Shown here: in pieces, positions 5,059 to 54,364 of the stretch
Position numbering within the stretch: the first letter of the stretch is position 1
Layout of the letters: each line of letters opens with the position of its first letter
Origin: Scyliorhinus canicula
Lineage: Eukaryota
DNA: 64,000 nt
Reading direction: 5' to 3'
Assembly (NCBI RefSeq): GCF_902713615.1
Contig: NW_024055479.1
Span: forward strand, 372,001 to 436,000
The notes under the pieces: model-generated
Database searches by the model: none
The model's input: the letters and a program-made list of their open reading frames with translations, nothing else
Told to the model about the DNA's origin: nothing
Program-made: the position numbers and the translations under genes

Positions 5059-5104
5059 CCGGCAGCAGAGGGCGCCATGTTCAAACAGGGGCGTGATGAC
5101 GTCA
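5059..5104 (+). promoter_or_regulatory. CTCF-like motif and CRE upstream of a V leader
   Basis: ccggcagcagagggcgcca at 5059-5077 and TGACGTCA at 5097-5104, about 200-250 bp before the ATG at 5307. Confidence 0.6.
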
Positions 5105-5306
5105 TGGGGTTTGCACTGTCAAAGCCGATAGGTTTGGGAGACTTGGTGATGTCATAATGGGTTTGGTAGCCTGGGTGATGTCACAATGGGCCTGGCCCCC
5201 TGCATTGTGTGGGTGGAACAATGAACTGAACAGAGCCCGGGTTCCCTCTCTCCTCTCAATCTCTGACTCACCCAATTCCCATTCACTCACAGAGATTCAG
5301 CCAGAC

Positions 5307-15560: not shown

Positions 15561-16002
15561 ACTTTGAAGTGTTAGGCAGAATCCATCAGGTGAGAGGTCA
15601 CAGGTGTCACCCCCGAACTTCTGATCAAAGCAAAACTGAACTCAAGGTAAAGCCTCTTTGTCCTGCAGAACACTCCAGAACACTCAGCGCCAATAAACAT
15701 CGAGTACCAGCAAAGTATCAATGTACAACAGCTTATTGGCCATCAGCCAAGTCAATCATAGGAGTCATCACTGTGTCAGACCAAACAACACATCCTGCAG
15801 GATTTTCCTGTTTCTAAATTAAAGATAAAGTCTATCTTAAAGACATAGGTCCCATTAACAGTCCAGGTACAAAAATTGAACGAGCAGAATAAATTAAATT
15901 AAAAAGAAGAATCAAGGGACAGACAGGAATTAACAGGAAGATCCTTAACATGGAGAGGACCAGTTGATTTGAGTCCTCAACTAAAGGTTATTGGCCCACA
16001 GC

Positions 16003-16010
16003 TGACGTCA
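16003..16010 (+). promoter_or_regulatory. CRE (TGACGTCA) upstream of a V leader
   Basis: Exact palindrome about 200 bp 5' of the ATG at 16213. CREs are known in TCR V promoters. Confidence 0.5.
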
Positions 16011-16212
16011 TGCCTGGGCGACTAGCCGATCACAGCACAGAAGAACATCCCTCGCTTTCCCAATGAGTGAAAACTGCCTCTGATCTGTGTTTACTCTTTG
16101 CCTCTGATCTGAGTTTTCTCTTTGCCTCTGATCTGAGTTTACTCTGTGATATGAGAATAGAAGCAGCAACATATTTCAAACAGTGTCACTGTTTACTGTC
16201 CAATCAGGAACC

Positions 16213-16560
16213 ATGTGCTCCCTGTGTGCTTTACTGATAATCATGGTCTTGCTGCCCGGTGAGTCTGAGCTCAAATCCTCAGTGTGTGTTTCATGGGTTA
16301 TATTTACTCACAGATTTCGCACACATTATATATCTTGTTACAGGAACCAGTGGCCAAAAATCAGTTTCCCAGGAGCTGCAGGAATTACTGGTTCAGGAAG
16401 GACAGCTAACAACATTGAATTTTAATACACAACAAACTACACTGTGTCAACTCTCTTCTGGTACATCCAGTATCGCGGGGAGTCTCAGAGATATTTATTG
16501 AGGTGGCACAGCAGGTGGCAGGGGCATAGGTCTCCAGATTGAGGTTCACCTGTGCACTAT
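16213..16560 (+). pseudogene. TCR V pseudogene (family B), 3'-truncated
   Basis: Leader MCSLCALLIIMVLLP-G|gtgagt (16213-16258). Exon from 16344 reads GTSGQKSVSQ..., is frameshifted before LFWYIQY, and has no YxC or RSS. Confidence 0.8.
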
Positions 16561-25164: not shown

Positions 25165-25965
25165 GACATAGGAAAACAGGAATTAGCAGCAGACATAAGC
25201 AATTCAGCCCTTCGAGCCTGCTCTGCTATTCAATCAGATCATGGCTGATCTGTTCCTGGACTCAAATCCAACTCCCCACCTGTTCCCATATCCCGGTAAC
25301 CCGTTTTTAAAATCAGAAATATATACACATCCTTCTTGAAAACATTTAATGACTCAGACTCCACCGCACTGTTGGGAGGCGAGTTCCACAAATTCATCAC
25401 ACTCTGGAGATGCAATTCCTCCTCATCTCAACTCCACATCTCAACCTATATCTGTGACTTCTCGTTCTAAATTGTCCCACAAGAGGGAAGATTTCATCTA
25501 AGTTTAATTTATCAATCCCCTTTAGGATTGTAAATACCTCGAAGAGATTCTGAACTCCAGCGAGTATGAGCCCAAACTGTTTGATCTCTCCTCATACGTC
25601 AACCCTTTCATCCCTGGAATCAATCTGGTGAACCTCCTGTGAACTGCCTCCAAGGACACCACATCCTTCCTCAAATAAGGAGACCAAAACTGGACACAAT
25701 ACTCCAACTGTGCTCTCTCCAACACCCTGCACAATTGCAACATCACTTCTGTACTTTTATACTCCAATCCTTTTGCAAGAAACACAAACATTCCATTTAT
25801 CTTTTTAATTACATGCTGTACCTGCATACTGACTTTCTACGATTCATGCACAAAGGCACTCAGGTCCCGCTGCCCAGTCGCATATTGAATCTGCTTTCCT
25901 TTTAAATAATAATTCGCTTACCTATTTTGTCGGCCAAAATGGATATCCTCACACTTTTCGCTGGA
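25165..25965 (-). mobile_element. CR1 LINE 3' fragment
   Basis: ORF 25522-25827 reads ...LEYCVQFWSPYLRKD...RFTRLIPG. Confidence 0.9.
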
Positions 25966-25983: not shown

Positions 25984-27624
25984 CTCACTTACAACAGTAT
26001 GGGTATACCTCACTTACAACAGTATGGGTGTACCTCACTTACAACAGTATGGGTGTACCTCACTTCCAACACTATGGGTGTACCTCACTTACAACACTAT
26101 GGGTGTACCTCACTTACAACGGTATGGTGTACCTCACTTACAACAGTATGGTGTACCTCACTTACAACAGAATGCGTGTACCTCACTTACAACAGTATGG
26201 GTGTACCTCACTTACAACAGTATGGGTGTACCTCATTTAAAACTATATGGGTGTACCTCACTTACAACTGTATGGGTGTACCTCACTTACAACAGTACGG
26301 GTGTACCTCACTTACAACTGTATGGGTGTACCTCACTTTCAAAAGTATAGGTGTACCTCACTTACACAGTACGGGTGTACCTCACTTACAACTGTATGGG
26401 TGTACCTCACTTACAACACTATGGGTGTACTTTATTTACAACTGTATGGGTATACCTCACTTACAACAGTATGGGTGTACCTCACTTACAACTGTATGGG
26501 TGTACCTCACTTACAACACTATGGGTGTACTTTATTTACAACTGTATGGGTGTACCTCACTTACAACTGTATGGGTGTACCTCACTTACAACTGTATTGG
26601 TGTACCTCACTTACAACTGTATGGGTATACCTCACTTACAACACCATGGGTGTACCTCACTTACAACATTATGGGTGTACTTTATTTACAACTGTATGGG
26701 TGTACTTTATTTACAACTGTATGGGTGTACTTCACTTACAACTGTATGGGTGTACCTCACTTACAACACTATGGGTGTACTTCATTTACAACTGTATTGG
26801 TATACCTCACTTACAACTGTATGGGTGTACCTCACTTACAACAGTATGGGTATACCTTGCTTACAACAGTATGTGTGTACCTCACTTACAACTGTATGGG
26901 TGTACCTCACTTACAACAGTATGGTGTACCTCACTTACAACTGTATGGGTGTACCTCACTTACAACAGTACGGGTATACCTCACTTACAACTGTATGGGT
27001 GTACTTCACTTACAACTGTATGGGTGTACCTCACTTACAACACTATGGGTGTACTTCATTTACAACTGTATTGGTGTACCTCACTTACAACTGTATGGGT
27101 GTACCTCACTTACAACAGTATGGGTATACCTCACTTACAACAGTATGTGTGTACCTCACTTACAACTGTATGTGTGTACCTCACTTACAACAGTATGGTG
27201 TACCTCACTTACAACAGTATGGGTATACCTCACTTACAACAGTATGGTGTACCTCACTTACAACTGTATGGGTGTACCTCACTTACAACAGTACGGGTAT
27301 ACCTCACTTACAACTGTATGGGTGTACCTCACTTACAACAGCATGGGTGTACCTCACTTACAACAGTATGGTGTACCTCACTTACAACAGCATGGGTGTA
27401 CCTCACTTACAACAGTATGGTGTACCTCACTTACAACAGTATGGTGTACCTCACTTACAACAGTATGGGTGTACCTCACTTACAACTGTATGGGTGTACC
27501 TCACTTACAACTGTATGGGTGTACCTCACTTACAACTGTATGGGTGTACCTCACTTACAACAGTATGGTGTACCTCACTTACAACAGTATGTGTGTACCT
27601 CACTTAAAACAGTATGGGTATACC
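25984..27624 (+). repeat. 25-bp minisatellite (about 65 copies)
   Basis: Unit gggtgtacctcacttacaac(a/t)gtat, with 24-bp and tttattt variants. Confidence 0.95.
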
Positions 27625-27883
27625 TATACACATGGAATGTAGTGGTTCAAGGAGGAAGTTCACCACCACCTTCTCAAAGGCAGGTAGAAATGGGCAACGA
27701 TGTTCATTGTCATTAACCACTTTTTATAAAGCACCCAATCTGTAAACATTCCAACCATGAAACCATGAACTGAACTAACCTGCTCCTGCCTCCTGGTGGC
27801 GAGTGCTTGTAAACAGTATACAACTAATGGAGACAAAGTGGGCGTTCGGGGTAATTTGTGACTATTAACTACAGATCCAGAGG

Positions 27884-29247: not shown

Positions 29248-30025
29248 TAAGAACATAAGAACTAGGAGCAGGAGTAGGCCATCTGGCCCCTCGAGCCTGC
29301 TCCACCATTCAATGAGATCATGCCTGATCTTTTGTGGACTCAGCTCCACTTTCCGGCCCGAACACCATAACCCTTAATCCCTTTATTCTTCAAAAAACGA
29401 TCTATCTTTATCTTAAAAACATTTAATGAAGGAGCCTCAGCTGCTTCACTGGGCAAGGAATTCCATAGATTCACAACCCTTTGGGTGAAGACGTTCCTCC
29501 TAAACTCAGTCCTAAATCTACTTCCCCTTATTTTGAGGCTATGTCCCCTCGTTCTGCTTTCACCCGACAGTGGAAACAACTTGCCCGCATTCATCCTATC
29601 TATTCCTTTCATAATTTTATATGTTTCTATAAGACCCCCCCCCCCCCCGGCCCCATCCTTCAAAATTCCAACGAGTATAGTCCCAGTCTACTCAACCTCT
29701 CCTCCTAATCCAACCCCTTCAGATCTGGGATTAACCTCCTGAATCTCCTCTGCACACCCTCCAGTGCCAGTACGTCCTTTCTCAAGTAAGGAGACCAAAA
29801 CTGAACACAATACTCTAGGTGTGGTCTCACTAACACCTTATACAATTGCAGCATAGCCTCCCTAGTCTTAAACTCCATCCCTCTAGCAATGAAGGACAAA
29901 ACTCCATTCGCCTTCTTAATCACCTGTTGCACCTGTAAACCAACTTCCTGTGACTCATGCACCAGTACACCCAGGTCTCTCTGCACAGCAGCATGCTTTA
30001 ATATTTTATCATTTAAATAATAATC
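29248..30025 (-). mobile_element. CR1 LINE 3' fragment
   Basis: ORFs 29705-29986 (LEYCVQFWSPYLRKD) and 29340-29663 (FTQRVVNLWNSLP). Confidence 0.9.
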
Positions 30026-33680: not shown

Positions 33681-33718
33681 GGTTTTTGTACGGCACCCGC
33701 TATATCTGCAGCAGTGTG
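33681..33718 (-). other. RSS (22-nt spacer)
   Basis: cacactg, 22-nt spacer, acaaaaacc. Confidence 0.85.
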
Positions 33719-34139
33719 GGCTCCATGGCACATAAATACACTGCGCTGTCGGAGGGAAGCGCCCTGGCGATATTTAAAGGGACTGTTTTGTTTCCTTTGT
33801 GTAAAACGGCAGAAAATCTTCCTGATAAACCTTGAGACGTACTTCCCGTGCTATATATCGTGAATAAATATTGGGGAGCTTTCCCGGGAGACTGGATGTA
33901 CCAGAGAAGATTTCGATTACCAGCTGCCGAGTAACTGCAGTCCAATTTTACGGACTGTCCTTCCAGAACGGTTAATTCAGATGGATTCTGCGACACTGCA
34001 TCGTTGCCATTGGTTCCTGCAACAAATTATAGCATCTGTTAAATATCTGGTGGCGAACCTTGGCGACAGACACTGACTATTTAAACAGAAACTCACCAGG
34101 TAGCAAGAGAAGAATTAGTAAAGAACATCGGGAGAACAT
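33719..34139 (-). CDS. Intact TCR alpha/delta-type V segment (family B)
   Basis: Leader MFSRCSLLILLLLP-G (34139-34097), 80-nt GT-AG intron, exon 34016-33719 GTNGNDAVSQNPSELTVLEGQSVKLDC...LWYIQ...DSAVYLCAMEP. Confidence 0.92.
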
Positions 34140-34275
34140 GCCAGCTGCTTCAAAATTTCACAGAAGCCACAGAACTTAAAAAATATATCAACACATCCAC
34201 TCCGACATGAAAAAGTAAACTCAGGTCATTGTGAGGCTTTATTTATTGAGAAACGAATGGGCGTTGTCCAATGGC

Positions 34276-34693
34276 ATGATTGGTTGGTCTCTCAGTGCTG
34301 TCGGTATGATTGGCTGGTCTCTCAGTGCTGTCGGAATGATTGGCTGGTCTCTCAGTGCTGTCGGTATGATTAGCTGGTCTCTCGGTGCTGTCGGCATGAT
34401 TGGCTGGTCTCTCAGTGCTGTCGGTATGATTGGCTGGTCGCTCAGTGCTGTCGGCATGATTGGCTGGTCGCTCAGTGCTGTCGGCATGATTGGCTGGTCT
34501 CTCAGTGCTGTCGGTATGATTGGCTGGTCTCTCAGTGCTGTCGGCATGATTGGCTGGTCTCTCAGTGCTGTCGGTATGATTGGCTGGTCTCTCAGTGCTG
34601 TCGGTATGATTGGCTGGTCTCTCAGTGCTGTCGGCATGATTGGCTGGTCTCTCAGTGCTGTCGGCATGATTGGCTGGTCTCTCAGTGCTGTCA
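34276..34693. repeat. 30-bp minisatellite, 14 copies, 13 carrying a CCAAT box
   Basis: Unit atgattggctggtctctcagtgctgtcgg(c/t). Starts 137 bp upstream of the V ATG. Confidence 0.95.
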
Positions 34694-34884
34694 GTAATTG
34701 GACACCAATCAATATTAGTTGTAGCCCAATGACATTTTCTCTCCCCCTCTTTCTGTCTTTTATTGTATCTCCGGCTCTCTGTTCGTCCCTCTGTCTGTTT
34801 GGCTCCTTTCAATCTTTAGGATTGTCTGTGAGCCAATCTCCTTTTTCCGCGTCACGGAGCCGAGTTCTCCCTCTACAATGTTAG

Positions 34885-35140
34885 GACTGAGCTCAGGGCG
34901 AACATCTTCACCCAAAGGGTTGTGAATCTATGGAATTCCCTGCCCAGTGACGCAGTTGAGGCTCCTTCTTTAAATGTTTTCCATGATAAAGACAGATAGT
35001 TTTTTGAAGAATAAAGGAATAAATGACAATGGTGTTCGGGCGGGAAAGTGGAGCTGAGTCCACAAAAGATCAGCCACGATCTCATTGAATGGCGGAGCAG
35101 GCTCGAGGGGCCAGATGACCTACTCCTGCTCCTAGTTCTT
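34885..35140 (+). mobile_element. CR1 3' end fragment
   Basis: ttcacccaaagggttgtgaatctatggaattcc...ctcctagttcttatgtt. Confidence 0.8.
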
Positions 35141-35796
35141 ATGTTAATATTCCAGGAAAATGCAGAATGTAGATCATACAATTCCCCCCAGTCTCCCATT
35201 TTGACAAGTTGCTCAAACAATAGTGGGAGCAGTTATATTAGACAAAATGTACTAATCACAACTGCGAGAAAAAAAATTAAATTGTAGGAGGTAGATTCAA
35301 ATCCCACAGGATGTCAGATAAGAATGATTTAGGAGCCATAATTATATCCTTCATTCGGACTTTTAAGAATTCGAATCTTTGCAGTATTTTCTGTTTTCAG
35401 CTCGTGCCGGCATCGAACCTAGGACTTGAGCACCGTGAGGTAGCTGTACTACCCATTAGGCCACCGTCTTGCCCTTGCTGAACATACTTATGCAACACGC
35501 TTCAAACTTCTTGAAGCCGCGAAATGAAAGGCGAAACCGCCAGAGGACGCTGTGGTAATACATTTCGCACAGTAGTAAACGGCAAATTGAAGATGAAACC
35601 AGTCACAGCCCCGCCCCAAACTCCCCTTGCTGTTCTTGTTATGATCCACATTGCCTGCCGTTTGTTATTAACATATTGTTGAAGTGGCTTCCTCTTCGAC
35701 TTTGGTTTGGATTACCAGTGCAGTGGGGAAGCAATCTGTATCTTTGCTCCGACGGGTATGTTATTGGACTGGAGGGTCCCGGATTCAGGGAGCGTC

Positions 35797-36282
35797 ATGC
35801 AGAAACAGCTCACACTGATCCTCATCATTATATCATTTCTCAGTAAGTATTTATTTTCCTGCAAAAAATATCCTCCCCAAGATGTCTAACCAAGTTACCG
35901 TTCTGATGAAATAATGATAGTCATGTTCATTGAGGTGATGACACTGACCATGATGATAATAGCTATGGTTTTCTGTCAGACTGGAGCCACGAAGCAGCAG
36001 TGGAACAACCGACCCGTGAAATGGCGGTGAGAGAGGAAAGTAATGTCACACTAACCTGCACCATGAAAGGAAGTGATCGTCGAAGTTATATGTTCTGGTA
36101 CCGTCAACACTTCGGACAACCCCCACAGTATGTCATTCGTATTATAGGAGAGAAAGTGAGAAGACAACCCGACATCAGTGATCGATTCTCTTCGATGTTC
36201 GACACGAGTAGCAAGATTACAGAGCTAAGGATCAGCAGTGCAATGATCTCTGACTCTGCGGTGTATCTCTGTGCACTGAACC
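35797..36282 (+). CDS. Intact TCR alpha/delta-type V segment (family C)
   Basis: Leader MQKQLTLILIIISFL (35797-35842)|gtaagt. Exon from 35980 reads AAVEQPTREMAVREESNVTLTC...MFWYRQ...DSAVYLCALN. Confidence 0.92.
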
Positions 36283-48020: not shown

Positions 48021-48220
48021 GTTTGACTGAACCTCTCTGAGTGAATGGGACTGGGATGAGGCAGAGATTGAGAGGAGAGAGGGAACCCGCGCTCTGTTCA
48101 GCTCATTGATCCACCCACACACTGCAGGGGACCAGGCCCATTCTGACATCACTCAGACCACGACGTCTATTGGTTTTGACGGTGCCCTCACGGAACTTCA
48201 TCATCCCCATGTTTGAAGTT

Positions 48221-48238: not shown

Positions 48239-50103
48239 AGTAGTTTCATTCCTGTTTGAATGCAGCCACTGAATGGATTGAGGGTGCATTGAAATACACA
48301 AAAAGACATGAATGTCTCCCAGAAATCTAAACTAGATCTGCTAGGAAACAGTTTTTACTACTGTTGATGTTTGTGTCAGAAACGGACACTAAATCGATGA
48401 AATCTTTGCTGTCCGTTTCTTTCCAAATCTTGTGCACGACAAATGAGGAGTAGTATTAGGACGTTGGAGAAAGATGTTATATATTTAAATATTAACAGGG
48501 ACGAGGGCCGTTTATGCAAAGACCAGAGAATTCTGAGTTCATTTGCTTGTAAGAATAGAGGTAGAAGGAAGACTCAAATCGTTTTGCTGTAATTGTTCCC
48601 ATTAGCAGCAGATCCAATGACAAATCATCCCGATTTGATAGAAAAATATGATAGAGAATTATGTATTTATTCATAATATTCCGATTTGTTAACATCTAGA
48701 ACACAACGCGAAAATGATGAAAGAAGATTCAATAAGAACTGCCAAAAGGTGACTGTCATAATCTGAGAATGGAAAGCAATATTGAAAATGTGGGGTGCGA
48801 AAGACGATTGGGACAGCATTTTCAAATAGGCATGTGCCGAATGTTCATTCCGTTCCCTAATTTTTGATACTTCTGGGCGATTCATGCCAGTCCCCCACTA
48901 ATTGTTCTCACTCACATGAGCAGTGAACAGGTGCAGGATGCTCACAAGTCTCCAGAGATTCAACCGTCGCTATTTCCGCTCCGGCAATCCCGCCTGCAGA
49001 TGATACCAGCCGCACATTCTGACTACTTTAGAATCTGCGGTGTCCCGGGTCGCAGCCTCCGTTTGCTGTTCTCATTTCCATTCTGAAACGATTGTGCTGT
49101 TGGGGAAATTGCTGCACATGACCCATTCGTGGCATCGGATAGGAATTGAACAAACGAATGTGATATAAAGTAGGATTATTAGTTAGAATAATGTAGATGA
49201 TAGAGCCGGTCTGATGGTAGTGAGTTCACAGACAAATAACAAAGGAATTCAGCAAAGCATGGCCAGAAAGGTGGAGGGGAGCCTCGTGCAGAGGATGGTG
49301 AAAAGGATGCTGGGTAACAAGAGGCCCATGGTTGAGGAATCCGAAGTGAACCATTCAGGATATATGGCCAGGTCAGGAGGTGTATAGGATGACCTATGGG
49401 AATCTTGTATGTGAAACGTGATGCCTTTTGAATATGTGCAGAGATTTCTTTGTCTTGGTCCTCAGTCGGTTCTGGGAGCTTCAAGAGACTGTATGTGTTC
49501 TGAATCTCTATAGAGAGGGTCAGCCTTGCAAGTTGATTAAAAATAAATAATACTATACCTACAGATTCCTCTCAAGTTTTATTGAGACCAGACTGTCAGC
49601 AAAATAATCAGGATTATCACAAGCACATGGAAGGAGAGCATATGGGGGATAGTGTGTGTGAGAGAGAGAGAGAAAGATTTGAAGCAAAACTCTGAGCAGA
49701 AGGTCAAGAAAGAGAAAGATACTGAAATAGGTTTAGCCTCACTGGGTAACGATTACATTTGGTTAACTGTAAATGTGAGCCTCTGCTTGGGTGTCTGTAC
49801 GAAAGTGTTTGCACGTGCGTCTGGTGTGTGTGTAAGTGCATCGATGGAAGGCCAACCTCAAGCGGATTAGCACAGAAAGAGCTTTGAGTGTTCATGCAGT
49901 AATAGGGCACCAGCATCACTGACTGGTTCATTGTTAGTCCCATTTCTGAGAGAGCAGCCAATCCTCTTCCTCGGCAGCTGTCCCTCAGATTCACAATAAG
50001 CGAAACATGCCCAATTCTATGTTCACTCTTCAATGTCAGTCTATAACATTCAGAATATTTAAAACATTCTGATTTGTTAGCTGAAATCTAAACCACCTGC
50101 CAT

Positions 50104-50547
50104 ATTTCTCCTATGTCCTTTCCCGCTAACCATGGTCGTGTTGCCCGGTGAGTGGATTTTTGAATCGTTTCTTCCTATGTTCCATTGTTTGCAATTACTG
50201 TGATGTCTGACAAAGGTTGGTCTTTGTTTTAGAATTAGTGGATGGATTCAATGTCCCAGAGATGATTCAGGAAGGACAGACCGTAACACAAAACTGCAAT
50301 TACTATACATCGGATAGCTATCCCTCCCTCTTTGGTACATTCACTATTCTACAGAAGCTCCGGGATCCTTAATGAGGAGGTATGGAAAGGGGTAGCGGGC
50401 TAGTTCTCCAGAATAACAAGAGCGGTTTATTTTTGCTGATTTCGACCAGGACAATGAAACAGTCCCTTTACATCTTAGTTAAGCTTCTGTCCCTGACTCT
50501 GCCGCGTATCTCTGTGAGCCTAGATGCATTCAGTCCGTAGAAAAACC
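50104..50547 (+). pseudogene. Degenerate family-B-like V pseudogene
   Basis: Leader ...VVLP-G|gtgagt (donor 50148). QEGQTVTQNC, FWYI and DSAAYLC with frameshifts. Heptamer lost; nonamer agaaaaacc at 50539. Confidence 0.75.
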
Positions 50548-52479: not shown

Positions 52480-52518
52480 GGTTATTGTACGGCATCTGCT
52501 ATATCTCTGTGCAGTGTG
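52480..52518 (-). other. 23-RSS
   Basis: cacactg, 23-nt spacer, acaataacc. Confidence 0.85.
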
Positions 52519-52967
52519 GGCAACATGGCACAGAAATACACGGCACAGTCGGAGAGAAGGGCCCCGGCGATAGTTAAGGAACCGTTGTGTTTTCTTTATG
52601 CAAAACCGCCAAGATCCTCGCTGGTAAATTTGGCGAAATATTTACATCCCCAGAGCTATATATTGCCATTAAATATTTTGGAGCTTTCCCGGGATACTGG
52701 ATGTACCAGAACAGAGTTCGAAGAGCAGCTGTCGAGTATCTACAATCCAGTGTTACGTTCTGTCCTTCCAGAACCTTTAATTCAGATCGATCCTGGAACA
52801 CTGCGTCTTCGCCATTTGTTCCTGTAACAAGACACATAATGTTTCAAACGTCTGGGAGTGAACATAACATATGGAACATGTGTATGTGTGATATTGAATA
52901 TTATAGTAAATATTGACTCACTGGGCAGGATGATGAGAATCACCATAAAGCAATATGAGGAGAACAT
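52519..52967 (-). pseudogene. Family B V with a single 1-bp deletion
   Basis: Intact leader (52967-52922) and splice sites. Exon is open to TTVP* (TAA 52576-52574). Adding one T restores LTIAGALLSDCAVYFCAML, as in the paralog at 33719. Confidence 0.9.
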
Positions 52968-54364
52968 GGTGCCCGGTTTACAGTTGGAAAGAAATAAAAT
53001 CATGCTTGAAATAAGTTGCAGTTCTAGTCTGATATTAAAGAGTAATCTCCAATCAGCTGCAGATTTCACGCAATGTGATTCTGATGGGCGTTTCCCAAGG
53101 TCAGGATTGGCTAGTCCCTCAGTTCTCGTGAGAGTCGGGCACCAATCGTTCTTGCTCCTGGGCTAACGAACTCCTTCAGCATTTTCGCTGCCTTGGTGTC
53201 TCTCAGCTTTCTCTTCGTGTCTGTCTCTCTCTGCTGTTCGGCTTCTCTGTCGGTATCTTGCCTCTCTTTCTCTCTCTCTGTCAGAGACACTTTCACTGTC
53301 TCGTTTTCGTTCCTTCGCGTGGCATTCAAGTTCAGAAGGTAGAAAATCAAATTCATCTCAAATTCCCGTTTCAACCAATTCACGAACCAAGGTACAGTGA
53401 AGGGACCCGGTGCCGTGATGTGGAAACAAAAGGTCGGAGAAACGAAGAGAGACAAACGAACAAATAACAACAAAAACAGAGAGAGAAACAAAGGAACATA
53501 GTGAGAAAAAAGCATGAAGTGGATTCAGGAATTCAAAATGGGAAGAAAAATAAGACATAAATAATATCTATTTAAATATTAAATAATTGAGAAAATGATA
53601 TAATCAATTGAATATAACACAACACGTCAAAATAAGTTACTTCACTGCAATTTAAACATAATTTAAAATTAATTCCTGTGTATATTAACCTGCATTAATA
53701 ATAGTAATAAAAAGGAACCCGTAACCGCTCCCGCCGCAGTCAACAGACAAATATGATGCTGGAGCTCTTTGGTGGGAGGAACTTTAAATTATACAAGATG
53801 ATAACTACAGTTCAGACGCCAGAATAAAATGAAGGCAGCAAACGTCTAATGTATGTTAAATACATGTATGTTAAATTACAAGTTTCAGATACTAAACTAA
53901 TAGCGTATATCCCCGTTCTGTGCATATGCCACGAACAACACAGAGACCATTTCCCTGAGTGCCACAGTAGAATGTTAATCAAACTCGACTCCCTTCACTA
54001 CCACCTCTGCCCCCCCCCCCCCCCCCCCCCCTCTCCTTATACCCTTCCGGGCAGCCAGTTCAGTTTCATTAATGACAGAGACTAAAATCAATAGAACATC
54101 TTCATCTGCATCCAGCACTTTTTATTCTTCCAGGGAACAGTTTTCAGGACAATTATTGATTAAACAGTCGCTGAGGTCAATTAGAGATCAAATTTACCGT
54201 TCTGATTTTTACCGTTCTGTTAGTGATCAGCGAAATGTACGGTTAGATTTCAGCCTCTGCAATAAAACCAAACTTGTGATTTACAAAAATAATATCAGGC
54301 CAATCAGACACAGCTCTGGAGGCGATGTTCCTGTCATGTGTTCCGCAGGAAGTGACATCAGTCA

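What the first reader, a model, noticed from the sequence alone, without database searches (positions are those of the whole stretch)
34276..34693. Promoter CCAAT box amplified 14-fold in front of an intact V; the paralog has a single copy
Seen: the 30-bp unit reads ...accAGCCAATCAt on the V strand, and 13 of 14 units keep CCAAT. The array begins 137 bp upstream of the ATG (34139). The paralog (ATG 52967) has one homologous unit, aggattggctagtccctcagttct, starting 136 bp upstream (53103). Known: RRCCAATSR is the NF-Y site, and multi-CCAAT promoters often space sites about three helical turns apart. Inference: a VNTR made from the promoter element itself could tune germline transcription and RSS accessibility, and so repertoire usage, in a copy-number-dependent and possibly polymorphic way.
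Basis: partly seen in the sequence, partly recalled or inferred. Interest (0 to 1): 0.72.

Follow-up and report, generated by a model that had tools for sequence, protein, structure and literature searches.

The report
CCAAT-box minisatellite in shark TCR V promoter
In a catshark T-cell-receptor V-gene cluster, a 30-base piece of one V gene's promoter that carries a conserved CCAAT box has been copied head-to-tail 14 times; the repeat is real and promoter-derived, but whether the extra copies change how much the V gene is used is untested.

Summary
Fourteen whole 30-bp units (34692-34273, minus strand) sit 134-137 bp upstream of the ATG of an intact TRA/TRD-type V gene, and 13 of them keep an NF-Y-type CCAAT box.

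The array was amplified in place. Both of its flanks align to one single-copy unit in the paralog.

New here: four members of this V family in the window share a two-box module. An inverted CCAAT lies exactly 36 bp before the CCAAT, and the CCAAT lies 139-144 bp before the ATG. This is a paralog footprint that supports a real promoter element.

The "paralog" is a frameshifted pseudogene. V1 is the only intact family member in the window.

Contigs from two animals reach the same array junction. The array words are low-copy, so this is neither a satellite nor a transposon head. Contigs from one small run break exactly at V1's exon borders, which suggests spliced, rearranged use.

Not shown: the transcription start, NF-Y binding, copy-number polymorphism, or any dose effect. 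Inside the array nothing indicates selection on CCAAT.

The closest analogue is the human TRIB3 33-bp promoter VNTR. This scan has already noted other CCAAT arrays at promoters elsewhere in this genome.

Verdict: a real promoter-element minisatellite, a new member of a known kind, of moderate interest.

The parts
34273..34692 (-). Minisatellite of 14 whole 30-bp units, each running from GACAG to ATGCC on the V strand. The CCAAT sits at unit positions 20-24, and 13 of 14 units keep it.
   Evidence: TRF 34276-34696, 30 bp x 14.0, 95%; phasing and unit table; 13 RRCCAATSR hits.
34279..34283 (-). Proximal CCAAT (unit 14). It lies 144 bp before the ATG and about -65 from the predicted start site.
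   Evidence: The position relative to the start site is an inference from the TATA-like and Inr-like motifs.
34705..34709 (-). Block A: an inverted CCAAT (ATTGG), exactly 36 bp before the CCAAT of unit 1 (34673).
   Evidence: The same 36-bp distance is found in V2, Vd and Vm; alignment.
34237..34247 (-). TATA-like A/T-rich block, about 31 bp before the Inr-like A at 34216.
   Evidence: Coordinates; it falls in conserved block C of the family alignment. Its function is inferred.
34209..34222 (-). Inr-like conserved block (GAGTTTACT...). The predicted start is A 34216, which gives a 5'UTR of about 77 nt.
   Evidence: Block D is conserved in V1, V2, Vm and Vd. No transcript-end data.
34097..34139 (-). 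Leader exon of V1 (ATG at 34139, 43 nt, followed by a GT donor).
33719..34017 (-). V exon of V1. It is intact and TRA/TRD-type, and ends ...YLCAMEP.
   Evidence: Translation, Pfam V-set 1.5e-17, tblastn.
33681..33718 (-). Recombination signal: heptamer CACACTG, 22-bp spacer, nonamer ACAAAAACC.
53102..53146 (-). Single-copy homologue in the paralog V2: ATTGG at 53146-53142 and the CCAAT unit at 53102-53123 (CCAAT first C at 53110, 143 bp before ATG 52967).
52515..52822 (-). V exon of paralog V2. A frame change and a stop come before the YFC motif, so it is a pseudogene in this assembly.
   Evidence: Three-frame translations; split tblastn hits.
49922..49966 (+). Third family member, Vm (pseudogene). 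The CCAAT unit is at 49945-49966, 144 bp before the former ATG (now ATA, 50102). Block A has degenerated to ACTGG.
15990..16145 (+). Fourth family member, Vd (degenerate). It has ATTGG at 15990, a CCGAT at 16026 (36 bp on), and a 24-bp x 3 tandem triplication of the Inr-like block at 16075-16145.
34881..35145 (.). Very high-copy interspersed repeat about 190 bp upstream of the array. It is not part of the array.
   Evidence: Summed contig depth of 1e5-1e6 in all four runs; a 90.6% identical copy at 29252-29515.

Best explanation
This is a locus-specific minisatellite. It arose in place, by slippage or unequal exchange, from a 30-bp piece of the proximal promoter of a TRA/TRD-type V gene. That piece carries the family's conserved NF-Y-type CCAAT box.

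The ancestral promoter of this V family has four parts in order: an inverted CCAAT, a CCAAT exactly 36 bp further on, a TATA-like block, and an Inr-like block. The CCAAT lies about 140 bp before the ATG. Because the duplication is tandem, both ancestral spacings survive at the two ends of the array. Unit 1 is still 36 bp from the inverted box. Unit 14 is still 144 bp from the ATG, about -65 from the predicted start.

The proximal unit therefore most likely goes on serving as the working CCAAT box of a V gene that is still intact and apparently still rearranged and expressed. The other 13 units add a run of potential NF-Y sites at 30-bp spacing, from about -95 to -476.

Inferred, not shown: NF-Y can occupy several of these sites, keep the region nucleosome-poor, and so raise or stabilise promoter activity and accessibility of the V gene and its recombination signal in a copy-number-dependent way, as in the human TRIB3 promoter VNTR.

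Confidence in the structural part (real, in situ, promoter-derived) is about 0.9. Confidence in a dose effect on expression or usage is about 0.25. The figure given is for the whole statement.
For: - Array.
- In-place origin: outside the V exon, the only blastn similarity between the two paralogs within +/-1.5 kb is the CCAAT island, and it matches both ends of the array (34299-34257 and 34710-34665 against 53126-53084 and 53147-53102, 79% each, alignment). The 27-nt segment from the CCAAT into the downstream flank occurs only at these two places.
- Family footprint: the unit pattern finds a third member at 49945-49966 (0.02 matches expected by chance). The four-way alignment shows conserved blocks A-D. 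The block A to block B distance is 36 bp in all four members, although the sequence between them has diverged. The CCAAT to ATG distance is 144, 143, 144 and 139 bp.
- Spacing: NF-Y-bound double CCAAT boxes in human ChIP-seq peak at 24-27 or 26-30 bp and at 36 bp, with none closer than 19 bp (PMC4889920).
- Independent DNA: contigs from two samples run from the unique 5' flank into the array and stop there (X1 33712-34290; X5 34126-34304 with 1 mismatch). Array words have 1-5 times the unique depth, close to the 31-mer multiplicities of 2-4 computed from the assembly.
- Use of the gene: V1 is intact. In run X9 one contig ends its match exactly at the V-exon acceptor (34017) with 11 unmatched letters. 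Another leaves the germline at 33722, 3 nt before the V end, and runs on for 74 unlike letters. This is what a spliced, V-J-joined transcript would give.
- Precedent: in the TRIB3 33-bp promoter VNTR, copy number tracks expression (PMC7425993). V promoters are needed for efficient V rearrangement (Ryu et al. 2004, as cited in PMC2685407).
Against: - No transcription start, NF-Y binding or chromatin data exist for this locus. The TATA and Inr assignment rests on motifs alone.
- Inside the array there is no sign of selection on CCAAT. Five unit positions vary and one of them (position 21) lies in the pentamer, against 0.83 expected by chance.
- The copy number of 14 rests on the assembly alone, and polymorphism was not testable.
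- The three proximal bins of the array (34294-34435) are not covered by contigs of either DNA sample. The array may differ between animals, or the contigs may have been filtered out or placed elsewhere.
- X9 shows a little depth on array words (0.9-1.5), so some transcription through the array cannot be excluded, if X9 is RNA.
- Minisatellites are common in this window (12-14 loci of period 15 or more), so one landing on a promoter is not in itself remarkable.
Confidence: 0.55

Rival explanations
1. Neutral minisatellite. The array is a tolerated by-product of a genome that makes tandem duplications often. Only the proximal unit acts as the CCAAT box. The other 13 units neither help nor harm, and V1 usage does not depend on their number.
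For: The window has 12-14 tandem-repeat loci of period 15 or more, including a 25-bp x 66 and a 78-bp x 4.6 array without CCAAT. Three of them fall within 400 bp upstream of a V ATG, against about 1 expected (Poisson P about 0.08), which is not significant. Within the array, variation shows no sparing of CCAAT. One unit has already lost the box.
Against: Nothing decisive. The unit spacing happens to be compatible with NF-Y co-occupancy. Array words are also present in a second, closely related organism label (X13, bins 34436-34790), which hints that the array is not brand new. Comparable promoter VNTRs do change expression (PMC7425993).
Confidence: 0.35
2. The array weakens or rewires the promoter. 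It pushes the inverted CCAAT and everything upstream 390 bp further from the start site. It may act as a sink or spacer, or serve the divergently oriented V gene (ATG near 35797, plus strand) rather than V1.
For: Block A is moved from about -101 to about -493 relative to the predicted start. V1 and the next V gene are head-to-head, with 1.66 kb between their ATGs, and CCAAT boxes work in both orientations.
Against: V1 is intact and apparently rearranged and spliced in X9. The proximal unit keeps the ancestral distance to the ATG, and unit 1 keeps the 36-bp module with block A. A high-copy repeat lies between the array and the other V gene.
Confidence: 0.07
3. Not a genuine promoter feature. 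The array would then be an assembly artefact, or a piece of a mobile element such as a monomeric CR1 5' head (heads with CCAAT boxes were noted elsewhere in this genome).
For: Short-read contigs cannot span the array, so the number 14 is unverified. Scan notes report CR1 heads made of CCAAT-bearing monomers in this genome (s1-278430). A high-copy repeat lies 190 bp away.
Against: Both flanks of the array are homologous to the single-copy paralog promoter. Contigs from two animals enter the array at the same junction. Array words have 1-5 times the unique depth, against 1e5-1e6 for the neighbouring repeat. The unit is absent elsewhere in the window except at the homologous promoter positions.
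Confidence: 0.03

Closest known systems
Human TRIB3 promoter 33-bp VNTR (PMC7425993)
   Same: A repeat of about 30 bp made from a conserved promoter segment that overlaps a transcription-factor site. The segment is single-copy in relatives (here, in paralogs), and the repeat lies close to the start site.
   Different: TRIB3 has 1-5 copies, a C/EBP-ATF element, proven polymorphism and a proven positive dose effect. Here there are 14 copies and a CCAAT box, the gene is a rearranging V segment, and neither polymorphism nor an effect has been shown.
Multi-CCAAT, NF-Y-bound promoters, such as cell-cycle genes and double-CCAAT modules (PMC4889920)
   Same: Good NF-Y consensus (YRRCCAATCA). The ancestral pair of boxes is 36 bp apart and the array spacing is 30 bp, both within the reported preferred ranges. 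The proximal box lies at about -65 from the predicted start.
   Different: Known modules have two to a few boxes with unrelated spacers. Here 14 near-identical units form a young minisatellite. NF-Y binding was not tested.
Conserved CRE decamer of mammalian TRBV promoters (Anderson et al. 1988, as cited in PMC2685407)
   Same: A short family-specific promoter motif at a fixed distance upstream of V genes. Another V family in this very window carries that decamer 133 bp before the ATG (48153-48144), and one member has it tandemly duplicated (5145 and 5174).
   Different: The element amplified at V1 is a CCAAT box, not a CRE. To my knowledge, no CCAAT-based V promoter module has been described for TCR V genes.
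Other CCAAT-box arrays at promoters in the same catshark genome (scan notes s1-240215, s1-246721, s1-200344, s1-243569)
   Same: A single promoter CCAAT segment amplified into a phased array just upstream of a gene.
   Different: The genes differ (CENPF-like, FAN1, TYSND1) and so do the unit lengths (26-52 bp). Those notes were not checked here.

Membership tests
NF-Y-type CCAAT box / multi-CCAAT promoter | Match to the extended consensus RRCCAATSR | tested here: met
   13 of 14 units match (AGCCAATCA or AACCAATCA).
NF-Y-type CCAAT box / multi-CCAAT promoter | Position about -60 to -100 from the transcription start | tested here: inconclusive
   The proximal box is at about -65 from a start predicted only from the TATA-like (34247-34237) and Inr-like (A 34216) motifs. 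No 5'-end data.
NF-Y-type CCAAT box / multi-CCAAT promoter | Box-to-box spacing compatible with co-occupancy (19 bp or more; preferred 24-30 and 36 bp) | tested here: met
   30 bp within the array; 36 bp from the inverted box to the first CCAAT in all four family members. Ranges from PMC4889920.
NF-Y-type CCAAT box / multi-CCAAT promoter | Binding by the NF-YA/B/C trimer | not testable with these tools
   Needs EMSA or ChIP in catshark thymocytes.
Promoter VNTR (TRIB3 type) | Head-to-tail repeat derived from a conserved promoter segment that is single-copy in relatives | tested here: met
Promoter VNTR (TRIB3 type) | Copy number varies between individuals | tested here: inconclusive
   Contigs of two DNA samples break at the array. 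The proximal bins 34294-34435 are uncovered in both, which could mean different units or filtering.
Promoter VNTR (TRIB3 type) | Copy number changes expression | not testable with these tools
   Needs reporter assays or allele-resolved expression and usage data.
TRA/TRD-type V gene segment | Leader, intron and V-set exon with conserved Cys, Trp and Cys, followed by a 23-type recombination signal | tested here: met
   V-set 1.5e-17; C...WY...YLC; heptamer, 22-bp spacer, nonamer.
Transposon-borne monomer array (CR1 or L1 5' head) | The array is continuous with a mobile element and its unit is dispersed in the genome | tested here: not met
   Both flanks are promoter sequence homologous to the paralog. 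Array words are at 1-5 times unique depth.

The most novel reading that the evidence does not exclude
Tandem amplification of the key promoter motif may be a recurrent way in which shark antigen-receptor V promoters, and other promoters of this genome, evolve. Three V promoters in this one window carry a tandem duplication of their own conserved block: CCAAT x 14 at V1, the Inr-like block x 3 at 16075, and the CRE decamer x 2 at 5145. Under this reading the V1 array is a copy-number-variable NF-Y platform that sets germline transcription and signal accessibility, and so sets how often the only intact member of this V family enters the repertoire.
Probability: 0.15. Interest if true: 0.7.

Novelty: new member of a known kind. 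Interest (0 to 1): 0.4.

Why it matters
V-segment usage in antigen-receptor repertoires is strongly unequal, and part of that inequality is set by V promoters and local chromatin. A promoter element turned into a length-variable array in front of an intact V gene would be a simple heritable dial for repertoire composition. It would be testable in a species with a good genome and accessible thymus.

The family footprint found here is also the first concrete promoter model for a shark TCR V family that I am aware of. It consists of an inverted CCAAT, a CCAAT 36 bp further on, and about 140 bp to the ATG.

Together with the scan's other CCAAT arrays, it raises a wider question: do catshark promoters, or NF-Y-bound DNA in general, tend to form minisatellites?

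If the array is neutral, the finding is an ordinary minisatellite that happens to sit in a promoter.

Tried and rejected
- **Protein word search with V1 (114 aa).** The aim was to find orthologues in other sharks and then fetch their promoters. Nothing scored. Full-length TCR chains fall outside the length window, so no cross-species promoter comparison was possible.
- **Read laying (one call allowed).** All four runs were contigs, so there is no depth-based copy number, no transcript ends and no spanning reads.
- **Selection inside the array.** Too few variable sites (5) to tell.
- **Enrichment of tandem repeats in V promoters.** 3 of 12-14 loci against about 1 expected, P about 0.08, and the test was post hoc. 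Not claimed as significant.
- **Other factor motifs in the unit.** Checked by eye only, with no matrix scan: no convincing CTCF, E-box, Ets, Runx or GATA site. The GACAG at the unit start is only half of a PBX/PREP DECA site, and AGCCAAT is also an NFI half-site. Neither was pursued.
- **Transposon origin.** Rejected (see rivals).
- **Literature search for CCAAT or NF-Y in TCR V promoters.** No relevant precedent turned up.

Full report
**What is there**

Tandem Repeats Finder reports one clean array at 34276-34696: period 30, 14.0 copies, 95% matches, no indels. Read on the minus strand and put in phase, it is 14 whole units from 34692 to 34273. Each unit runs from GACAG to ATGCC, with CCAAT at unit positions 20-24.

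The extended NF-Y consensus RRCCAATSR matches 13 times in the array, always on the V strand. The whole window has 31 matches against 11.5 +/- 3.7 in shuffles, so most of the excess is the array. Unit 11 has CTAAT. Unit 14 has AACCAAT, which still fits.

Five unit positions vary (9, 13, 19, 21, 28). Only position 21 lies in the pentamer, against 0.83 expected by chance, so the array itself gives no evidence for or against selection on the box.

**The gene behind it**

On the minus strand there is:
- an ATG at 34139
- a 43-nt leader exon and an intron
- a V exon at 34017-33719 that ends ...YLCAMEP
- a heptamer at 33718-33712, a 22-bp spacer and a nonamer at 33689-33681

The spliced product is open and matches Pfam V-set at 1.5e-17. 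The window is a cluster of about a dozen TRA/TRD-type V segments on both strands, many of them pseudogenes. Earlier notes of this scan identify the genome as a catshark.

**The paralog is a pseudogene**

Its V exon, however, changes frame and meets a stop before the YFC motif. Within the window, V1 is the only intact member of its family.

**Origin of the array**

I compared 3.5 kb around each paralog. The V exon and signal align at 78%. Outside them, the only detectable similarity is the CCAAT island, and it is hit twice, by the downstream end of the array with its flank and by the upstream end with its flank (79% each, alignment). The 27-nt stretch that runs from the CCAAT into the downstream flank occurs only at these two places in the window.

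The array is therefore an in-place tandem amplification of a 30-bp piece of ancestral promoter. It is not an insertion.

**A family promoter footprint (new here)**

Searching for the unit with up to three mismatches finds one more site, 49945-49966 on the plus strand (0.02 matches expected by chance). It lies in front of a third, degenerate family member whose ATG has become ATA. A fourth member at 16213 has CCGAT at the same place.

A four-way alignment, with V1's array collapsed to one unit, shows four conserved blocks:
- A: an inverted CCAAT (ATTGG)
- B: the CCAAT unit
- C: an A/T-rich, TATA-like block
- D: an Inr-like block (GAGTTTACTCTT type)

The distance from block A to block B is exactly 36 bp in all four members, although the sequence between them has diverged. 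The distance from the CCAAT to the ATG is 144, 143, 144 and 139 bp, the last after collapsing a 24-bp triplication.

In human NF-Y ChIP-seq data, double CCAAT boxes prefer 24-27 or 26-30 bp and 36 bp, and are never closer than 19 bp (PMC4889920). The ancestral pair therefore looks like a classical two-box NF-Y module, and the 30-bp array spacing would allow neighbouring sites to be occupied together.

Because the duplication is tandem, unit 1 keeps the 36-bp relation to block A and unit 14 keeps the 144-bp relation to the ATG.

From the TATA-like block (34247-34237) and the Inr-like A at 34216, I predict:
- a start near 34216
- a 5'UTR of about 77 nt
- the proximal CCAAT at about -65
- the array spanning about -57 to -476

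This is motif-based inference only.

**Independent reads**

Only contigs were available.

*DNA samples.* In two DNA samples, contigs run from the unique 5' flank into the array and stop there, as de Bruijn contigs do at a repeat. X1 covers 33712-34290, and X5 covers 34126-34304 with one mismatch.

Array words in bins 34436-34719 have about 1-5 times the unique depth. This is close to the 31-mer multiplicities of 2-4 computed from the assembly. The neighbouring interspersed repeat at 34881-35145, by contrast, reaches 1e5-1e6. So the unit is locus-specific, neither a satellite nor a transposon head.

Bins 34294-34435 are uncovered in both samples. That could mean the proximal units differ between animals, or it could be filtering or placement. 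No conclusion is drawn. The number 14 and any polymorphism remain unverified.

*Related organism.* A run labelled as a second organism (X13, about 3% divergent in the V exon) also has array words and the upstream flank. This hints that the array is not brand new.

*Run X9.* In this small run of unknown kind, one contig stops matching exactly at the V-exon acceptor (34017), with 11 unmatched letters. Another leaves the germline at 33722, 3 nt short of the V end, and continues for 74 unlike letters. Breaks at both exon borders are what a spliced, V-J-joined transcript would give, so V1 is probably in use. The 5' end was not captured.

**Context**

V1 is head-to-head with another V gene (ATG near 35797, plus strand). 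The array and the high-copy repeat lie in the 1.66-kb space between them.

Two other V promoters in the window carry small tandem duplications of their own conserved block:
- the Inr-like block x 3 at 16075-16145
- a 29-bp duplication that doubles a GGTGATGTCA decamer at 5145 and 5174

The sister gene of the second case has one AGTGATGTCA at 48153-48144. In both genes the proximal decamer lies 133 bp before the ATG. This is the CRE-type decamer known from mammalian TRBV promoters (PMC2685407).

Three of the window's 12-14 tandem-repeat loci of period 15 or more lie within 400 bp upstream of a V ATG. About one would be expected (P about 0.08). This is suggestive, was tested post hoc, and is not significant.

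The scan's own notes list further CCAAT arrays at promoters of unrelated genes in this genome. I did not check them.

**Interpretation**

Shown:
- a real, in-situ amplification
- made of a promoter segment whose CCAAT box is conserved in sequence, spacing and position across four old paralogs
- in front of an intact V gene that is probably expressed

Inferred:
- the box is an NF-Y site
- the start lies downstream of the array
- extra copies raise NF-Y occupancy and openness, and so raise V transcription and signal accessibility

The best-documented precedent is the human TRIB3 33-bp promoter VNTR, where a conserved element that is single-copy in other species is repeated 1-5 times and copy number tracks expression (PMC7425993). 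V promoters are known to be needed for efficient V rearrangement (Ryu et al. 2004, as cited in PMC2685407).

The main rival is that the extra units are neutral. Nothing here excludes that.

I put the structural claim at about 0.9 and the dose-effect claim at about 0.25.

**Verdict**

The feature is a new member of a known kind (promoter-element VNTR, multi-CCAAT promoter) and of moderate interest.

The notable points are its location at a rearranging V gene and the possible recurrence of such arrays in this genome.

Noticed in passing
window 5096-5183 (+) and 48144-48153 (-): A different V family carries the mammalian TRBV-type CRE decamer 133 bp before its ATG: AGTGATGTCA once at 48153-48144. 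In the pseudogene copy, GGTGATGTCA is doubled by a 29-bp tandem duplication (5145 and 5174), and a perfect TGACGTCA lies at 5096.
   Followed up: partly
window 16075-16145 (+): A 24-bp x 3 tandem triplication covers the Inr-like conserved block of a degenerate V1-family member. The same gene has CCGAT in place of the family CCAAT (16026), and a TGACGTCA lies between its two boxes.
   Followed up: partly
window 52515-52822 (-): The paralog V2 is a pseudogene in this assembly. A one-base frame change near 52577-52590 leads to a stop and to loss of the YFC cysteine frame.
   Followed up: yes
window 50102-50104 (+): The third family member (Vm) has its initiator ATG changed to ATA and several stops in the V exon, yet it keeps the CCAAT unit 144 bp upstream.
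   Followed up: partly
window 34881-35145 and 29252-29515: A very high-copy interspersed repeat (summed contig depth 1e5-1e6 in every run laid) lies between the two head-to-head V genes. A 90.6% identical copy sits at 29252-29515, and fragments lie near 25207, 44863 and 62928.
   Followed up: partly
window 25984-27625: A large 25-bp x 66 minisatellite (90% matches) with no CCAAT. It shows that long minisatellites are common in this locus.
   Followed up: no
window 33722 and 34017 (run X9): Contigs of a small run of unknown kind stop matching exactly at the V-exon acceptor and 3 nt before the V end, the latter running on for 74 unlike letters. This is consistent with spliced, rearranged V1 transcripts. 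The same run also covers the germline flank beyond the recombination signal at lower depth.
   Followed up: partly
window 33906-33907: All four runs laid, including the one labelled as another organism, read A and C where the window has G and A. The assembled haplotype seems to carry a derived two-base change in the V exon, or the contigs may come from a near-identical copy elsewhere.
   Followed up: no
window 34139 (-) and about 35797 (+): V1 and the next V gene are divergently oriented, with 1.66 kb between their ATGs. One of the two must therefore rearrange by inversion.
   Followed up: no
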